A program made the translations under genes and the position numbers. Source: Epithemia pelagica (taxonomy: Eukaryota > Protista > Bacillariophyta). Taken from it: DNA of 64,000 bases. The first letter of the stretch is position 1. Each line of letters opens with the position of its first letter. The notes under the pieces were generated by a model. That model was not told the origin of the DNA, searched no databases, and saw only the letters and a list, made by a program, of their open reading frames with translations. Below, in pieces: positions 31,759 to 38,150 of the stretch. The stretch covers positions 1,426,001 through 1,490,000 of the forward strand of contig OX337236.1 of NCBI GenBank assembly GCA_946965045.2. The letters are read 5' to 3'.

Positions 31759-32935
31759 CTAGGCAGAAGATGACAAACACTTTTCAATCAGTTGGTCGGC
31801 GGCTTTGGCAGTCACCTTTCCATACTCAGTATAGGACTCGTACGGAGCCTGCGTAGATGGATTGACGGCGGTGATGGCAGCCGGTACCCAGGGATTGCCA
31901 TCAGCATGCAAATACGCGCCCTGCAAATCAGCTTCTGTGTTAAAGTCTGGATCAAGACAGGCACGGAGACCTGCTACAGCCCCTTGAGACGGAACGTACT
32001 GGAAAAAGTAAAAGCCGTAGTAATAAATCTTGGCTGCGATTCCAATATCGGCTCCAAAGTTGGAAGCAATTGATCCGGGATGCAAGGAAGTGAAATTCAA
32101 CTCCGGATGCAACGACTGGTTGTAGCGATTGATTGCAATGATGGCCTCCTTAGCTCTTCCATACATGAACGCGGCACCTTCCATTAGAGGGTCAAGGGGA
32201 AAGTCAATTGTCCCATCCTCTTTTTCCACGACACGTCCAGGTGGAGCTCCGCATTGTTTCGGAAATTCTACAAGACGAGTTGGGTCAAAGTCAGTTCCGA
32301 AAATGTGTGCAATTGAGGCAATGTCGACAATTCTTGGTTTGTAGTCCGGTGTGGCCGCGTTCTTTAAAACAGGCAACAAAAGATCCGTCAAGTAATGGAC
32401 AGTCAAAAAGTTGCGTCCAACGTTACCTTCAATTCCATCCTTGGTTAAGATTGGCTTGGCGCATGCCACACCTGCATTGTTGAGCAGGACATGCAATTTT
32501 CCGTCGTATTTTTCCTTGGCAAGTTTGGTTACAAAATCAGCAGCAGACTTTGCGGTTTGGAGAGAGTCCAAGTCGAAGGCCGTCTCGTACAAGACAGGTT
32601 TCTCGATCTAACGTCTCACGGCTTCCTTCTCAATAGATTCAATGGCTGACTTGAGTTTGCCTTCGTTGCGACCCAACAATTCCAGCCTGTAACGCGAGTT
32701 CTTCTGCGGCATTGTAGCCAGATCCACCAATCGGTACACCCGTCACCACTGCCAGTTTGCCAGTCTGCTTGGCGTTGGGGGCCTCCTTAAGAAGTTTTGA
32801 CACATACGTTTTCGCGTACGGTTGAGTCCACGCATTCTGAATCGCAAAAGGAAGCTGGTATGTCAGAACAAACTTGTAAGTCTTTTCGCATTCCTCAGCC
32901 GGGCGGACTGTCACGGATCCCCCAACAAAAGGCAT
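31759..32935 (-). pseudogene. Short-chain dehydrogenase/reductase interrupted by a frameshift (~32680) and an in-frame TAG (32610-32608)
   Basis: LAVVTG, LLNNAGV, RIVDIASIAH, YGRAK and SLHPG motifs. The segment LLGRNEGKLKSAIESIEKE is out of frame with the N-terminus and is followed by a stop. Confidence 0.65.
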
Positions 32936-33503
32936 AGCGACTTGGCGTAGCTCTCTTTCTTTGCAACTGTTGACTTTCTCGAACTATGGCAACGGTTGAT
33001 GATTTCGACGTTGTCTATCGTGTTTTGCGTGGCCGAATCTTTTTTTGCGAAGCGTTTGGATCTTTCTCGTGTATCCTTTTCCGACGTCATTATCCCAAGT
33101 CTCCCAACGATCAGTCGCGAACTATCGCGATCAATTCCTGTCCGCGGATGTAGTGTGTGTGCAGCAGTCAGTATGAAGTATGATGTGTATTGTACTCGTA
33201 TATTGCAGTGTGGGACGTGAGCACTAGGTTTAACCTTAACCTTATTCGTTCACAAAGTCATCGCGCATTGCGCGCACGGGCACACGGGCACGGGCACAGC
33301 ACATATGGGCCCGGAGGCATCGGAAATCTTTCGCCTGTCCTACGTCAGTCGCCAAACCTCGTTTGATGGACGACCAACCGAGTTTGACAATGGGGGGTGC
33401 GAATGCGAAGTATGGTATAGATCTTTTGTCCAGAGAAAGATTCCTCCTGCCACACATTGCTAAGGTCGTCCAAGTCCAACCTTAACAACTTCTGCCTGGA
33501 AGC

Positions 33504-36503
33504 ATGTTGATTTTTCTATCGGCGTTTTCGTCATCGATTGGTTTGTCTATGTTGTATTCTATGATTTTGCTCTGTGGAGCATCCGCTTTCCAGCAACGAT
33601 TGGCACTCCAACAACTTTCACAAGCTTACAGGATCCGTCGTGCACCATTTGTTGCCACGACAGCGCTACAACGAGGATCCTACGGAACCCCGACGACTTG
33701 GTTGAGTATTGATCCGTATAAGCATTCATCACTTATGTTTTCCACCATGACTACGGAGAACCAAAACAACATGACCATGTCGTTTGGCGACAAGAGCAAG
33801 GACGATATCAGTGAAAGTGACAGGACGATGGTTCAAGAACGTTTTCTTACCAACCAAGAATTGGTCATGCAACGTGTCGCAGCTTCACGAGCACGAAGAG
33901 AAGCACGGCTCCGATCCCTGGAACAAACTGCAAACCGAAACTTTCAATTGAAAGAGCTGATTGAAAAGCAACATCACAATGGCGAAAGTGGAGGTGCAAC
34001 AAATCGAGCATCATCCATCGACCGTTCTTTGTATGCTCTGAAGGTGACAGTGTCAAGCGAGCTGCGAAAGCAAATGAAGTTGAGTGGGCGAGAGAAACGA
34101 GGTCGTGTCTTCTTGGAAGCTGACAGTCAAGCTGTTCGATCTCTCAGCACCTTAAAAGGTGAACTTGCGGGAGTTTTTCGCAAAATGCCAAAAGATTCCT
34201 TTGTTTTGGCCGCGGGCCTTCCAGTGCTGGCCCCGGATGGCTCCATTCTTCCTACTGCCGAAACAGCAAAGAGAGGGGACAATCATACCATCGGCAGCAC
34301 TACGAACAATGGTACTGACTCTGGCAATACTTTTTGGGACATTAATAGTGATGAAGACGTGGAAAAAACGTTTGCTGCGGCCGACAAGTTCTTTGACGAA
34401 AATAAAAATAGCCTGTTGAAGCGACCATCCATTATGATTCTTGTCAAACGAGATCCTAATGCACCACCACCACCTCCCCCTCCGGCATACCTTGACGACA
34501 TGGCCGATCCCTCTGAAACGACATCCATGACAATGTTATCATTTTATGCCTTTCCGCCAGGTGAAGGCATTGTCGACCCTGAACAATTTGCAACCGATTT
34601 AAGGAAGCAATGGCTACCCTTCCATGTACTGGGACGAGTATACGTTGCAAAAGAAGGGGTCAATGCACAAATGAGCTGTCCGACAAATGTTTTGACAAAT
34701 TTTATCCAATGTTGCAAATCTATTCCTGAGTTGGCGTACATGGAAAATGGAGTCAATATTGATCCAGTGACATTGTCAATGGAGGAGTATGCAGTCGCTG
34801 GCACCCCATCGGAAGGTGGACAACCGAGTCCGCCATTTCGCCGGTTGCATATTCGTGTGCGGAGTCAGGTAGTTGCCGATGGATTGGATAAGTCTTTGGA
34901 CTGGCAGTCAGCCGGCTATGATATGCCGCCCATGGAATGGCATGAAACCCTTCAAAAGATAAAGCAACAAAAGCAAAATGATAACCAAGACAAAACAGCA
35001 GTCGAAACACCCGTTATTCTGGACTGCCGCAATTCCTATGAAACGGACGTGGGAATATTTGAGGGTGCAGAACCTCTGGGCACAGTAAATTTTAGGGATA
35101 GCTGGGATGTGCTTCGGGAGCGATTGGCTGACACGCCGAAGGATGCTCCAATTATGGCATATTGTACGGGAGGCATTCGCTGTGTCAAGGTTGGTGCCTA
35201 TTTGACACAAGAAATGGGATTCACCAATGTTTCTCGCCTGGCTGGAGGAATCATTGCCTATGATAGGACATTAAATGAAGGTAATCCCGATGAAGACTCA
35301 CTCTTTAAGGGAACCAACTTTGTCTTTGATGGAAGATTGGGAAGGCCGATAACTGAAGATTCCATGGGTACCTGTATCACTTGTGGTGTTGAAACATCCT
35401 TGATGAGTAATTGCCGCAATAGTAACTGTCACAAACGTATGGTTCAGTGCGAAAAGTGCCGTACAAAGTACCATGGGACGTGCTCCACCGCCTGTCGCGA
35501 TCGAGTTCTTCATGGGTCGTCCATGTCTGCTCCAGAGGGGTCAAACAATGTTGACATAGACGATGAGGCAACAAAGCAAGGCGCAAGCTATGCGTCCTTG
35601 GATGAGTATAGCGCTGGCCAGTCGACTCCACCGCCGTCTTTGTATCGGGAAATGGAGTTTAATACAAAAGCGTTGATTCCAACGGGTTCTCATATGGTGT
35701 CAGGAGAAATGCAGGGACGTTTGTTGAAGCAACTGGCAGCAATGACACGACATGGTCGTGTTCTCGAAATGGGAACGTTTACTGGATATGCAACGGCCTG
35801 TTTGTTCGAAGGGGTTTGCCAACTCGCTGGATCACTTGATGCCTCCTCCGAGCTTGGTCCGTACGTCATGAGTATGGAAAGAGATGTCAAAGCTTTTAAT
35901 GTTGCAGTGGCCCACATGCAAGTTGTAACACATCTGGGCTTTGGCGAAGAAGCTACCGAATGCATTTGCGCACTTCGCAGTGCTGATGATAATCTTGTCC
36001 CACTCATCGAAGAGGAGACCGTGTCGTTGGTCTCGGAATCTGGAGCAAAATGTGATCTTATACATGTGTCCGATGCCTTGGCCACTTTAGAGGAGATGGC
36101 CGATGGTCGAGGTGACCTTGCTCCAGAGGCTCCGTTTGATCTGGTGTTTGTCGATGCGGACAAAACTCGACTGATTGATTATGCCAATGCTTGTCTAGCC
36201 AGCGACAGTTTGCTTCGTAAGGGTGGACTCATTGTTGTGGACAATGTGTTGTGGAAAGGGGCAGTCTTAGAAATGACTGCTAGCAATACTCATGACCCCA
36301 TGAATACGGAAGATACCGGTGACAGCGACGATATGAAAAGAGGCGAGCACTATCACGACGCTGCCGAGTTGAAGCGAAATCGCCGCACTCGCAAGCTTGC
36401 CAGCAAAATGCATCAATTCAATACAGCCATATCGAATGACAGTCGCGCCGAGGTTCTGGTACTCCCTCTTCGTGATGGTCTCAGCATCATTCGAAAGAAG
36501 TAG
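33504..36503 (+). CDS. Fusion protein: TrhO/UPF0176 rhodanese-type tRNA U34 hydroxylase plus cation-dependent O-methyltransferase (TrmR/CCoAOMT family), plastid presequence
   Basis: One 999-aa ORF. Presequence ASA-F. TrhO part: SFYAF, GRVYVAKEGVNAQ, ILDCRNSYETDVGIFEGA, YCTGGIRC, LAGGIIAY, KGTNFVFDGR and a Cys-rich tail. O-MT part: MVSGEMQGRLL, RVLEMGTFTGY, FDLVFVDADK, GGLIVVDNVLWKG and LPLRDGLSIIRK. Confidence 0.9.
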   Translation: MLIFLSAFSSSIGLSMLYSMILLCGASAFQQRLALQQLSQAYRIRRAPFVATTALQRGSYGTPTTWLSIDPYKHSSLMFSTMTTENQNNMTMSFGDKSKDDISESDRTMVQERFLTNQELVMQRVAASRARREARLRSLEQTANRNFQLKELIEKQHHNGESGGATNRASSIDRSLYALKVTVSSELRKQMKLSGREKRGRVFLEADSQAVRSLSTLKGELAGVFRKMPKDSFVLAAGLPVLAPDGSILPTAETAKRGDNHTIGSTTNNGTDSGNTFWDINSDEDVEKTFAAADKFFDENKNSLLKRPSIMILVKRDPNAPPPPPPPAYLDDMADPSETTSMTMLSFYAFPPGEGIVDPEQFATDLRKQWLPFHVLGRVYVAKEGVNAQMSCPTNVLTNFIQCCKSIPELAYMENGVNIDPVTLSMEEYAVAGTPSEGGQPSPPFRRLHIRVRSQVVADGLDKSLDWQSAGYDMPPMEWHETLQKIKQQKQNDNQDKTAVETPVILDCRNSYETDVGIFEGAEPLGTVNFRDSWDVLRERLADTPKDAPIMAYCTGGIRCVKVGAYLTQEMGFTNVSRLAGGIIAYDRTLNEGNPDEDSLFKGTNFVFDGRLGRPITEDSMGTCITCGVETSLMSNCRNSNCHKRMVQCEKCRTKYHGTCSTACRDRVLHGSSMSAPEGSNNVDIDDEATKQGASYASLDEYSAGQSTPPPSLYREMEFNTKALIPTGSHMVSGEMQGRLLKQLAAMTRHGRVLEMGTFTGYATACLFEGVCQLAGSLDASSELGPYVMSMERDVKAFNVAVAHMQVVTHLGFGEEATECICALRSADDNLVPLIEEETVSLVSESGAKCDLIHVSDALATLEEMADGRGDLAPEAPFDLVFVDADKTRLIDYANACLASDSLLRKGGLIVVDNVLWKGAVLEMTASNTHDPMNTEDTGDSDDMKRGEHYHDAAELKRNRRTRKLASKMHQFNTAISNDSRAEVLVLPLRDGLSIIRKK

Positions 36504-36782: not shown

Positions 36783-38150
36783 ATGCTTCTTCAGGAGGCC
36801 GCGTTGGAGCAACACGTCTTAAACGTCATGTCGCAGGGCCACATACGTGTGGCCGTGATGGGAAATGTCGACTCCGGTAAATCGACTCTAATTGGTACCC
36901 TACGACATAGTCAACTTGACGATGGTAATGGTGTCAATCGAAAGCTTGTCACTAAGTTTCGTCATGAACTCGAGTCCGGAAGAACAAGCACCGTCACTAC
37001 CCACTTGTTGGCATTTGATAAGGAGGGACAGATGATTGTTCCTCCCAGAAACGCAGGACGATACACCGAAGCCATACTTGCAAGAGAGGCGGATGGACGC
37101 GCAGTATCCTTGATGGATGTGGCTGGTCACGAGAAGTACTTCAAAACGACAATTTCCGGTTTGTCCCGTGGTATGGCTGACTACGCTCTTGTCTTCGTGA
37201 ATGCTTCTCAAGGAGTGACCTACATGACGAATCATCATTTGAGTCTGTGCCAAATGTGTGGAATCCCCGTCATTGTGGTGATAACTAAGGTGGACTCGGC
37301 CCCTGCGGACGTTCTCCGTCACACACGAAGCACTGTGGCCGCTGCTATCCGTTCGTCCAACATTGGTAAATCGCGATTCGCTGTTCGGAAAACTGCGGAT
37401 ATCGCTCACGTTAAAGACAAGATTCATGCAGTGACCCCAGTGTTGGATGTGTCTTGTGTTTCAGGTGAAGGTCTTGATCTTCTGCGTGAGATACTCAAGT
37501 CGTTGCCCAAGCGTCGGATGCATTCCAAAAAGATAAACCGTTCCTTTGAGTTTTTGTTGGAGGAAGTTTTCAACGTGACTGGAGTTGGAATGGTCTTGTC
37601 TGGATTCGTCAATGCCGGAAAGGTTAAACGGGGCGATGTCGTGTGTGCTGGCCCATTGTCTGGCGGGTCTTTCATCAGGACAACTGTGAAGTCGATTCAT
37701 GTTGCCCAAACCCCCGTAGATGAGGCTTGGGCAGGCCATTCGGCCTGTTTTGCTGTATCTATGACGAAGAAGCAAAGGAACATGCTTTCTCGCAAGGGAA
37801 CTGTGATTTTGAGTGAACCAATGCAGGAATCGGCAGTTGGTTTCACCGCCGATATTTGTTTGGCAACGGGAGACTCTGTCACGATGGTCAAAGGGCAAAC
37901 CCAGACTACAATGCATATTTTGCATTCCAAGCAATCGTGTCGACTCGAGGACTTTGAAATTGTGGATGACTGCGGAATGATGGAAAGCTTCGACAAATCT
38001 GTCCTTCGTCCTGGACAGCGTGCGATTGCAAGGTTCAAGTTTCTGCAGGGACCTCAATAAATTCGAACAGGAATGCGCGTCATTATTCGCGATGGCCATG
38101 TCCGTGGAGTCGGTATGATTGAAGAAGTGCATATGAAAAAGAAAACTTGA
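36783..38150 (+). CDS. GTPBP1/2-like translational GTPase; in-frame TAA at 38058-38060 precedes 29 more conserved-looking codons
   Basis: VAVMGNVDSGKSTL, RHELESGRTS, DVAGHEKY and TKVD; after the stop the frame reads IRTGMRVIIRDGHVRGVGMI. Confidence 0.85.

What the first reader, a model, noticed from the sequence alone, without database searches (positions are those of the whole stretch)
33504..36503. Plastid-targeted TrhO + TrmR-family fusion: candidate single-protein pathway for tRNA wobble 5-methoxyuridine
Seen: one uninterrupted ORF with a bipartite plastid presequence (ASA-F), a complete TrhO/UPF0176 module (~34520-35500, YCTGGIRC) and a complete cation-dependent O-methyltransferase (~35590-36503) with the SAM motif EMGTFTGY and metal ligands in DADK and VDN. 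Established: bacterial TrhO hydroxylates tRNA U34 to ho5U using O2, and Bacillus TrmR, a member of this O-MT family, methylates ho5U to mo5U; these are consecutive steps that widen wobble decoding. Inference: the fusion is a Rosetta-stone link implying mo5U34 on plastid family-box tRNAs, where decoding is usually attributed to unmodified-U superwobble. O2 dependence could couple plastid translation to photosynthetic O2. I know of no description of this fusion but could not search.
Basis: partly seen in the sequence, partly recalled or inferred. Interest (0 to 1): 0.85.

Follow-up and report, generated by a model that had tools for sequence, protein, structure and literature searches.

The report
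Diatom TrhO–O-methyltransferase fusion gene
A diatom nuclear gene really does join a tRNA uridine hydroxylase to an O-methyltransferase behind a plastid-type targeting signal, but a 2019 paper already reported this fusion, so the only open question is whether it makes 5-methoxyuridine on plastid tRNAs.

Summary
Window 33504-36503 (+) is one uninterrupted 999-aa ORF. It encodes a signal peptide ending GASA|F, a transit-like stretch, a complete TrhO (UPF0176_N, rhodanese with CTGGIR, Rhodanese_C) and a complete cation-dependent Methyltransf_3 O-methyltransferase.

The fusion is not new. Sakai et al. 2019 (PMC6599085) reported yceA(trhO)-trmR fusions in Phaeodactylum and Phytophthora and used them as a clue to identify TrhO.

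Here the fusion turns up in over 100 diatom proteins, including full-length transcripts. It also occurs in red algae, a chromerid, a raphidophyte, a pelagophyte, a chrysophyte and Paulinella. Plastid-less Pythium and Plasmodiophora have it too, so the family is not tied to plastids.

The methyltransferase domain is not closest to Bacillus TrmR. A profile of 87 fusion domains scores Coxiella, Synechocystis and Legionella O-methyltransferases at 176-184 bits and TrmR at 121. It does carry a basic patch that aligns with TrmR's RNA-contact arginines, and the nearest standalone bacterial relatives lack that patch.

Most likely function: consecutive U34 to ho5U to mo5U modification of plastid tRNAs. 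That is inferred, not shown.

The parts
33504..33587 (+). Signal-peptide-like N-terminus (residues 1-28), predicted cleavage GASA|F
   Evidence: Hydrophobic core with Kyte-Doolittle mean 2.17, followed by [ASGC]F. Motif position. No SignalP or ASAFind was available.
33588..33809 (+). Transit-peptide-like stretch (residues 29 to about 102), starting with Phe
   Evidence: Residues 29-95 hold 16 Ser/Thr, 6 basic and only 2 acidic residues. This stretch is not conserved in sequence among orthologues.
33810..34523 (+). N-terminal module (residues about 103-340): a long basic helix (about 117-162), a PB1-like beta-grasp domain (about 172-321) and a poly-Pro linker (321-327)
   Evidence: AlphaFold2 model has mean pLDDT 86.1. 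VIA-align gives PB1 domains as the top 8 hits, Z 8.4-9.9, e.g. 1wmh_B with 82/82 residues at rmsd 2.1. Foldseek matches are weak, E 0.03. There is no Pfam hit. A profile HMM finds the module ahead of TrhO in many non-diatom lineages.
34530..34871 (+). TrhO N-terminal acylphosphatase-like domain (UPF0176_N, residues 343-456)
   Evidence: Pfam PF17773, E 2.2e-15. It aligns with PDB 9j5o TrhO.
34995..35261 (+). TrhO rhodanese domain (residues 498-586) with the active-site loop CTGGIR at residues 554-559 (nt 35163-35180)
   Evidence: Pfam PF00581. The motif is located. Residues C, T, second G and R of CXGGXR are essential in E. coli TrhO.
35307..35498 (+). Rhodanese_C Cys-rich domain of TrhO (residues 602-665)
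   Evidence: Pfam PF12368, E 1.5e-17. It aligns with the C-terminal part of 9j5o.
35601..36500 (+). Cation-dependent class I O-methyltransferase domain (residues about 700-999). SAM motif EMGTFTGY 755-762, beta2 Glu792-Arg793, metal/catalytic Asp884, Lys887, Asp913, Asn914
   Evidence: Pfam PF01596, E 4e-26. AlphaFold2 model has pLDDT 92.6. Foldseek hits to PF01596 structures reach E 5e-14. D884, K887, D913 and N914 are invariant in 87 fusion domains.
35937..36047 (+). Structured insertion in the O-methyltransferase (residues 812-848), seen only in the diatom sequences among the lineages aligned
   Evidence: Present only in the diatom rows of alignment A1. Modelled as helix plus strand with pLDDT mostly 87-98.
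36366..36395 (+). Basic patch ELKRNRRTRK (residues 955-964) at the start of the last long helix; equivalent of TrmR's RNA-contact loop
   Evidence: With the last 55 residues as query, TrmR 5zw3 is the best PDB hit, at a non-significant E-value (0.015). It is the only hit aligned through the patch, pairing R961 with TrmR R178 and K964 with R181. R961 is Arg in 64/87 fusion domains. The patch is missing from the 80 closest bacterial O-methyltransferases.

Best explanation
This is an ORF with no intron apparent from the DNA, in a diatom nuclear genome, encoding a bifunctional tRNA wobble-uridine modification enzyme. After import, most likely into the plastid stroma via the signal peptide and Phe-initiated transit peptide, the TrhO part would hydroxylate U34 of family-box tRNAs to ho5U using O2. 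TrhO comprises the acylphosphatase-like domain, the rhodanese domain with CTGGIR and the Cys-rich C-domain. The fused Mg2+/SAM-dependent O-methyltransferase would then methylate the 5-hydroxyl to give mo5U. Its basic patch would hold the anticodon stem-loop as TrmR's Arg178/Arg181 loop does. The PB1-like N-terminal module probably mediates oligomerisation or docking. Shown here: the ORF, the domain architecture, intact catalytic residues, conservation of the fusion and a presequence of plastid type. Inferred: the substrates, the product and the compartment. The fusion was already published in 2019 for Phaeodactylum and Phytophthora.
For: The ORF and motifs are confirmed. Domain calls come from Pfam, NCBIfam and PDB searches. 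The TrhO CXGGXR residues required in E. coli are all present. The O-methyltransferase metal and catalytic residues D884, K887, D913 and N914 are invariant in 87 fusion domains. The basic patch aligns to TrmR R178/R181 (Ryu 2018), and the 80 closest standalone bacterial O-methyltransferases lack it: 0.96 Lys/Arg versus 5.8 in diatoms. The fusion is conserved in more than 100 diatom proteins, including MMETSP transcripts marked complete. It is also found in Porphyridium, Vitrella, Chattonella, Pelagomonas, Epipyxis and Paulinella. Of 56 orthologues with a long presequence, 29 pass a crude signal-peptide plus [ASGC]F rule, against 14% of shuffled controls. Sakai 2019 linked the same fusion to the xo5U pathway.
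Against: There is no RNA data for this organism, and no localisation or modification data for any diatom. The O-methyltransferase profile scores TrmR-type structures (109-121 bits) below catechol-type O-methyltransferases (168-184 bits), COMTD1 and CCoAOMT. NCBIfam TrhO scores 149.7, below its curated cut-off of 170. The residue at the TrmR Arg90 position is Ala. Several centric-diatom orthologues have a signal peptide without an obvious Phe at +1. The fusion exists in plastid-less Pythium and Plasmodiophora. Land-plant plastid U34 is generally reported as unmodified.
Confidence: 0.6

Rival explanations
1. The chemistry is the same (U34 to ho5U to mo5U), but the enzyme works mainly or also in mitochondria or another compartment. 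The plastid reading of the presequence would then be wrong or incomplete.
For: The fusion family occurs in plastid-less Pythium oligandrum, with no N-terminal extension. It also occurs in Plasmodiophora brassicae, with a short Arg-rich N-terminus before TrhO, and in Phytophthora. Some centric-diatom orthologues lack Phe right after the hydrophobic core. Only a crude rule was available for targeting.
Against: This protein has a textbook GASA|F junction and a Ser/Thr-rich, acid-poor continuation. The [ASGC]F junction recurs in many orthologues well above the shuffled expectation. The fusion is present in red algae and in several lineages with red-type plastids.
Confidence: 0.2
2. The O-methyltransferase domain does not methylate ho5U34. 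It acts on another substrate (a small catechol, a protein, or another nucleoside), and the TrhO part stops at ho5U or feeds a different derivative.
For: By sequence profile and by fold the domain is no closer to TrmR than to catechol or CCoA O-methyltransferases. The Arg86 equivalent is Arg in only 46 of 87 fusion domains, and the Arg90 position is Ala here. The 80 nearest bacterial relatives are standalone genes with no trhO within 3 kb.
Against: Covalent fusion to TrhO persists across very distant eukaryotic lineages. A conserved basic patch sits at the position of TrmR's RNA-binding loop and is absent from standalone relatives. TrmR proves that this fold can methylate ho5U.
Confidence: 0.15
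3. The ORF is two genes or two transcripts, or an assembly artefact, rather than one protein.
For: There is no RNA run for this organism. The laid contigs cannot show transcripts.
Against: There is no stop or frameshift over 3 kb. Two independent long contigs span the whole stretch, and indels occur only outside the ORF. Full-length fused ORFs appear in transcriptomes of other diatoms and in many genomes.
Confidence: 0.02

Closest known systems
yceA(trhO)-trmR fusion genes of Phaeodactylum tricornutum, Phytophthora sojae and P. ramorum (Sakai et al. 2019, Nat Commun, PMC6599085)
   Same: The same two-enzyme architecture, TrhO followed by a Methyltransf_3 O-methyltransferase, in a diatom. The same Rosetta-stone reasoning was used there as a clue for choosing yceA as the TrhO candidate.
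   Different: This is the orthologue in another diatom. The paper gives one sentence and a figure panel (and calls the organisms bacterial). It does not describe the presequence, the PB1-like N-terminal module, the insertions or the wider distribution, and it does not test the eukaryotic enzyme.
Bacterial TrhO (E. coli YceA; PDB 9j5o, 4f67)
   Same: The three-domain layout, the CTGGIR active-site loop and the Cys-rich C-domain match. E is 4e-25 to 9j5o over residues 12-334 of the query piece.
   Different: The diatom TrhO part has inserts, for example between the N-domain and the rhodanese domain. It scores below the NCBIfam equivalog cut-off (149.7 versus 170). It is embedded in a 999-aa protein.
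Bacillus subtilis TrmR/YrrM (PDB 5zw3/5zw4; Ryu et al. 2018, PMC6158493)
   Same: Same fold, SAM site and Asp-Asp-Asn Mg2+ site plus Lys. A basic stretch aligns with RNA-contact residues R178/R181.
   Different: Overall similarity is lower than to many non-tRNA O-methyltransferases: 121 bits against up to 184. Ala sits at the Arg90 position. There are two insertions, 812-848 and about 925-954.
Standalone cation-dependent O-methyltransferases of Coxiella (3tr6), Synechocystis SynOMT (3cbg), Legionella (3r3h), Leptospira (2hnk) and the Bacteroidota/Sorangium genes found here
   Same: These are the highest-scoring solved or genomic relatives of the O-methyltransferase domain.
   Different: The aligned 3cbg, 2hnk, 3tr6 and 5lhm chains and the Bacteroidota/Sorangium genes do not extend into or lack the basic patch; 3r3h was not examined at this position. 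The Bacteroidota/Sorangium genes have Ile/Glu at positions 793/796, are not fused to TrhO and have no trhO within 3 kb.

Membership tests
TrhO (tRNA uridine(34) hydroxylase, UPF0176) | Three-domain architecture: UPF0176_N + Rhodanese + Rhodanese_C | tested here: met
   Pfam hits at 343-456, 498-586 and 602-665, all above gathering scores.
TrhO (tRNA uridine(34) hydroxylase, UPF0176) | CXGGXR loop with the Cys, Thr, second Gly and Arg that are essential in E. coli (C200, T201, G203, R205) | tested here: met
   CTGGIR at residues 554-559. The requirement comes from Sakai 2019.
TrhO (tRNA uridine(34) hydroxylase, UPF0176) | Score above NCBIfam's curated equivalog cut-off (NF001133) | tested here: not met
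   149.7 bits against a cut-off of 170, E 9e-44. The model is built for bacterial proteins, and the diatom domain carries inserts.
TrhO (tRNA uridine(34) hydroxylase, UPF0176) | O2-dependent formation of ho5U34 on tRNA | not testable with these tools
   Needs a biochemical or genetic assay.
TrmR (tRNA 5-hydroxyuridine methyltransferase, Bacillus type) | Methyltransf_3 fold with SAM motif, Asp-Asp-Asn metal site and catalytic Lys | tested here: met
   PF01596, E 4e-26. D884, K887, D913 and N914 are invariant in 87 fusion domains. The model has pLDDT 92.6 and matches PF01596 structures.
TrmR (tRNA 5-hydroxyuridine methyltransferase, Bacillus type) | TrmR-specific RNA/SAM-contact arginines Arg86, Arg90 and Arg178 (Ryu 2018) | tested here: inconclusive
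   R961 aligns to R178 and K964 to R181. R793 follows the beta2 Glu as R86 does, but this mapping rests on position only. The R90 position is Ala797, with Lys796 beside it. A PDB search with that segment gave no hit.
TrmR (tRNA 5-hydroxyuridine methyltransferase, Bacillus type) | Closer in sequence to characterised TrmR than to other PF01596 subfamilies | tested here: not met
   The profile of 87 fusion domains scores 3tr6 at 184, 3cbg at 179, COMTD1 at 153 and CCoAOMT at about 137-144 bits. TrmR-type chains 5zw3, 2gpy and 8k1f score 111-121. The single-sequence search gives the same order.
TrmR (tRNA 5-hydroxyuridine methyltransferase, Bacillus type) | Methylation of ho5U34 to mo5U | not testable with these tools
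   Needs an assay or LC-MS.
Diatom plastid-targeted proteins (bipartite presequence, ASAFAP-type) | N-terminal signal peptide followed by Phe at +1 of the cleavage site and a transit-peptide-like region | tested here: met
   GASA|F at residues 28/29, a hydrophobic core, and a Ser/Thr-rich, acid-poor continuation. This was tested with a home-made rule only, not SignalP or ASAFind.
Diatom plastid-targeted proteins (bipartite presequence, ASAFAP-type) | Experimental plastid localisation | not testable with these tools
   No localisation data were found.
PB1 domain (beta-grasp) | PB1 fold | tested here: met
   The top 8 VIA-align hits are PB1 domains with Z 8.4-9.9 and full-length coverage. Atlas neighbours also carry PB1.
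PB1 domain (beta-grasp) | Sequence membership in Pfam PF00564 | tested here: not met
   No Pfam hit in residues 1-340 at E 0.01. Foldseek E-values reach only 0.03.

The most novel reading that the evidence does not exclude
Family-box tRNAs in the plastids of diatoms, and possibly of other red-lineage algae, carry mo5U34 made by this single imported bifunctional enzyme. Four-way decoding there would then rely on a bacterial-type xo5U modification rather than on unmodified-U superwobble. Because TrhO needs O2, the modification level could follow photosynthetic oxygen. The PB1-like module would be a eukaryote-specific addition that assembles or docks the enzyme.
Probability: 0.4. Interest if true: 0.7.

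Novelty: already known. Interest (0 to 1): 0.38.

Why it matters
xo5U wobble modifications are treated as bacterial. Organellar four-way decoding is usually ascribed to unmodified U34. A conserved, apparently plastid-directed TrhO-O-methyltransferase gives a concrete, cheap test of whether algal plastids keep a bacterial-type wobble modification. The test would be a knockout plus LC-MS in a transformable diatom. The fusion as a clue is not new, since it helped identify TrhO in 2019.

Tried and rejected
1. RNA evidence. The look-up of sequencing runs found no run recorded as RNA. The four runs laid are contigs and cannot show transcripts. One run's contig begins 99 nt upstream of the ATG and that run gives no cover over the intergenic stretch, which hints at RNA but proves nothing.

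2. Standalone relatives of the O-methyltransferase. The search for homologous proteins with the domain alone returned only fragments of diatom fusions among its 120 listed rows.

3. Bacterial relatives. The genome-contig scan uses peptide patterns taken from the fusion alignment. Firmicute TrmR does not fit those patterns, so no TrmR sequence was obtained. For that reason I could not build a rooted tree placing the domain among PF01596 subfamilies. The tree I did build only shows eukaryotic fusion domains separated from Bacteroidota/Sorangium genes with SH-aLRT 87, and its deep branches are unresolved.

4. A PDB search with the 28-residue beta2 segment, meant to align Arg86/Arg90 directly, gave no hit.

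5. A fold search of the O-methyltransferase model does not discriminate. TrmR ranks 49th with a TM-score equal to the top hits.

6. The protein-atlas feature search of the N-terminal module gave nothing.

7. Earlier scan notes hold nothing on this gene.

8. Gene neighbours are unrelated: a short-chain dehydrogenase upstream and an EF-Tu-like GTPase downstream. I did not use them.

Full report
**What is in the sequence**

Window 33504-36503 (+) is a single 999-codon ORF with an ATG start. An in-frame stop lies 18 nt upstream.
- GASAFQQ at residues 25-31
- YCTGGIRC at 553-560
- EMGTFTGY at 755-762
- DADK at 884-887
- VDN at 912-914

Pfam calls four domains: UPF0176_N (343-456), Rhodanese (498-586), Rhodanese_C (602-665) and Methyltransf_3. 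The best Methyltransf_3 stretch is 849-999, E 4e-26, and related models pick up the N-terminal half of the fold at 714-773.

The best NCBIfam family is the TrhO equivalog, at 149.7 bits and E 9e-44. This is below its curated cut-off of 170. The solved TrhO 9j5o aligns over the whole hydroxylase part at E 4e-25. The C-terminal part hits 43 solved cation-dependent O-methyltransferases.

**Is it one gene?**

No run recorded as RNA holds this stretch. Four runs kept as contigs do cover it. Two contigs of 17.9 and 19.4 kb span the whole region without joints.

Inside the ORF the runs differ from the window only by five substitutions: three synonymous, plus L834I and R905H. All three indels lie outside the ORF.

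The word-index search returned more than 100 proteins with the same fused architecture at 46-67% identity. These come from pennate and centric diatoms: Epithemia, Amphora, Pseudo-nitzschia, Cylindrotheca, Nitzschia, Seminavis, Fistulifera, Mayamaea, Cyclotella, Stephanocyclus and Thalassiosira. Several are MMETSP transcripts marked complete. A split gene or an assembly artefact is very unlikely.

**Already published**

Sakai et al. [quoted passage not shown] They used this as one reason to pick yceA as the second tRNA hydroxylase, now called TrhO. JGI annotation also names many of these proteins 'predicted sulfurtransferase/predicted O-methyltransferase YrrM'.

In the searched library I found no paper reporting mo5U in diatoms, and none of the listed papers mentioning 5-methoxyuridine and algae dealt with algal tRNA. 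I did not find any paper characterising the eukaryotic fusion protein, and Sakai et al. did not test it. A preprint on Arabidopsis chloroplast tRNA modifications does not mention ho5U derivatives. A coconut tRNA survey lists ho5U, with a TrhO homologue predicted to be chloroplastic.

**Distribution**

The exhaustive representative search found 365 clusters at E up to 1e-30. Many of these are non-diatom proteins holding both halves. Named members are:
- Vitrella brassicaformis, Chattonella subsalsa and Paulinella micropora
- Pythium oligandrum, Porphyridium purpureum and P. aerugineum
- Plasmodiophora brassicae, Pelagomonas calceolata and Epipyxis

The fusion is thus old and widespread in red algae and in lineages with red-type plastids. 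It also exists in plastid-less oomycetes and in Plasmodiophora. There the protein starts directly with TrhO (Pythium) or behind a short Arg-rich N-terminus (Plasmodiophora). The family is not intrinsically a plastid enzyme.

**Targeting of this protein**

Residues 1-28 have a hydrophobic core and end in GASA, followed by Phe. The next 67 residues hold 16 Ser/Thr, 6 basic and 2 acidic residues. This is the pattern known for diatom plastid import.

Among 56 orthologues with at least 35 residues ahead of the conserved part, 29 pass a crude rule of hydrophobic window plus [ASGC]F. Shuffled presequences pass at 14%. By eye, further orthologues have an AF junction that the rule misses. Several Thalassiosirales proteins have a signal peptide with no Phe directly after it.

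I had no SignalP or ASAFind. I rate plastid targeting of this protein as likely (about 0.65-0.7), but not shown.

**The hydroxylase half**

All four residues of the CXGGXR loop that are essential in E. coli TrhO (Cys, Thr, second Gly, Arg) are present as CTGGIR. The basic strand that aligns with the tRNA-binding sheet region is also basic here, as seen in the 9j5o alignment. I did not map E. coli K112 and R114 residue by residue.

**The methyltransferase half**

In an alignment of 87 fusion O-methyltransferase domains, Asp884, Lys887, Asp913 and Asn914 are invariant. These are the equivalents of TrmR Asp133, Lys136, Asp159 and Asn160. The beta2 acidic residue is always Glu or Asp. The domain models with pLDDT 92.6 as a class I O-methyltransferase.

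It is not specifically TrmR-like overall. The 87-sequence profile scores as follows:
- Coxiella 3tr6: 184 bits
- Synechocystis 3cbg: 179
- Legionella 3r3h: 176
- Leptospira 2hnk: 170
- SafC: 168
- Human COMTD1: 153
- Plant CCoAOMT: about 137-144
- TrmR-type chains 5zw3, 2gpy and 8k1f: only 111-121

Foldseek cannot separate these structures.

The domain does have one TrmR-like feature. With the last 55 residues as query, TrmR is the best PDB hit, although the E-value (0.015) is not significant. It is the only hit aligned through the stretch ELKRNRRTRK. That alignment pairs Arg961 with TrmR Arg178 and Lys964 with Arg181. Both of those TrmR residues contact the anticodon stem-loop backbone (Ryu 2018).

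Arg961 is Arg in 64 of 87 fusion domains. Arg793, next to the beta2 Glu as TrmR Arg86 is, is Arg in 46 of 87. The Arg90 position is Ala here, with Lys beside it.

The 80 closest bacterial genes found by pattern scan are mostly Bacteroidota, plus Sorangium, at 24-32% identity. They have on average 0.96 Lys/Arg in the patch columns, against 5.8 in diatoms and 2.9 in other eukaryotic fusions. They carry Ile and Glu at positions 793 and 796, and have no trhO within 3 kb.

My reading is that this is a general-type cation-dependent O-methyltransferase that has, or has kept, an RNA-binding surface. This fits a tRNA substrate but does not prove orthology with TrmR.

Residues about 103-340 form a conserved module. 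Pfam finds nothing there.

With an 84-sequence alignment, AlphaFold2 gives pLDDT 86. The model shows a 45-residue helix followed by a beta-grasp domain with one disordered loop. The representative-wide structural search puts PB1 domains in the first eight places, with Z 8.4-9.9. An example is Par6 PB1, 82 of 82 residues at 2.1 Å. Foldseek E-values are weak, at 0.03.

A profile HMM finds the core of this module in front of TrhO in many non-diatom proteins as well. Its role is unknown. PB1 domains usually mediate protein-protein contacts, and TrmR works as a dimer, so oligomerisation or docking is my guess.

The diatom O-methyltransferase also has a structured insert (812-848), seen only in the diatom sequences among the lineages aligned. 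A poorly modelled acidic loop (about 925-954) sits just before the basic patch.

**Verdict**

The gene is real, and the two-step U34 to ho5U to mo5U reading is the best explanation. It is an orthologue of a fusion already reported in a diatom, so the finding is not novel as stated. What remains open and testable is whether the product sits on plastid tRNAs. Four-way decoding in organelles is usually attributed to unmodified U34, although Alkatib et al. note a possible unknown modification on plastid tRNA-Ala(UGC). The idea of coupling to photosynthetic O2 is speculation with no evidence for or against it here.

Noticed in passing
window 33810-34523 (residues about 103-340): A conserved N-terminal module with no Pfam hit: a long basic helix plus a PB1-like beta-grasp domain. 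It precedes TrhO in diatoms and in many other algal lineages.
   Followed up: yes
P0399 (Pythium oligandrum), P0310/P0510 (Plasmodiophora brassicae): The TrhO-O-methyltransferase fusion also occurs in plastid-less eukaryotes. Pythium has no N-terminal extension. Plasmodiophora has a short Arg-rich N-terminus that looks mitochondrial.
   Followed up: partly
P0295, P0297, P0324, P0302 (representative-search hits): These are TrhO proteins of 630-750 aa, some with a signal peptide plus AF junction and the N-terminal module. They have no Methyltransf_3 and carry a C-terminal extension of 70-340 aa (most over 190) with no Pfam hit.
   Followed up: partly
window 32848-33404: Run X3 gives no contig cover over the intergenic stretch between the divergent upstream gene and this ORF. 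Its next contig starts 99 nt before the ATG and runs on through the next gene. This could mean X3 is an RNA library, but the record does not say.
   Followed up: no
window 31759-32935 (-): Two adjacent minus-strand ORFs (31759-32592 and 32639-32935) read like the two halves of one short-chain dehydrogenase/reductase, separated by about 46 nt. This is probably a short intron.
   Followed up: no
window 36783-38060 (+): The downstream gene encodes a 425-aa EF-Tu-family GTP-binding protein (GTP_EFTU, GTP_EFTU_D2 weak). It has no evident link to the fusion gene.
   Followed up: no
PMC6599085, results text and Fig. 3 legend: The 2019 paper calls Phytophthora sojae, P. ramorum and Phaeodactylum tricornutum 'three bacterial species'. 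All three are eukaryotes, which may be why the eukaryotic side of the fusion was never followed up.
   Followed up: no
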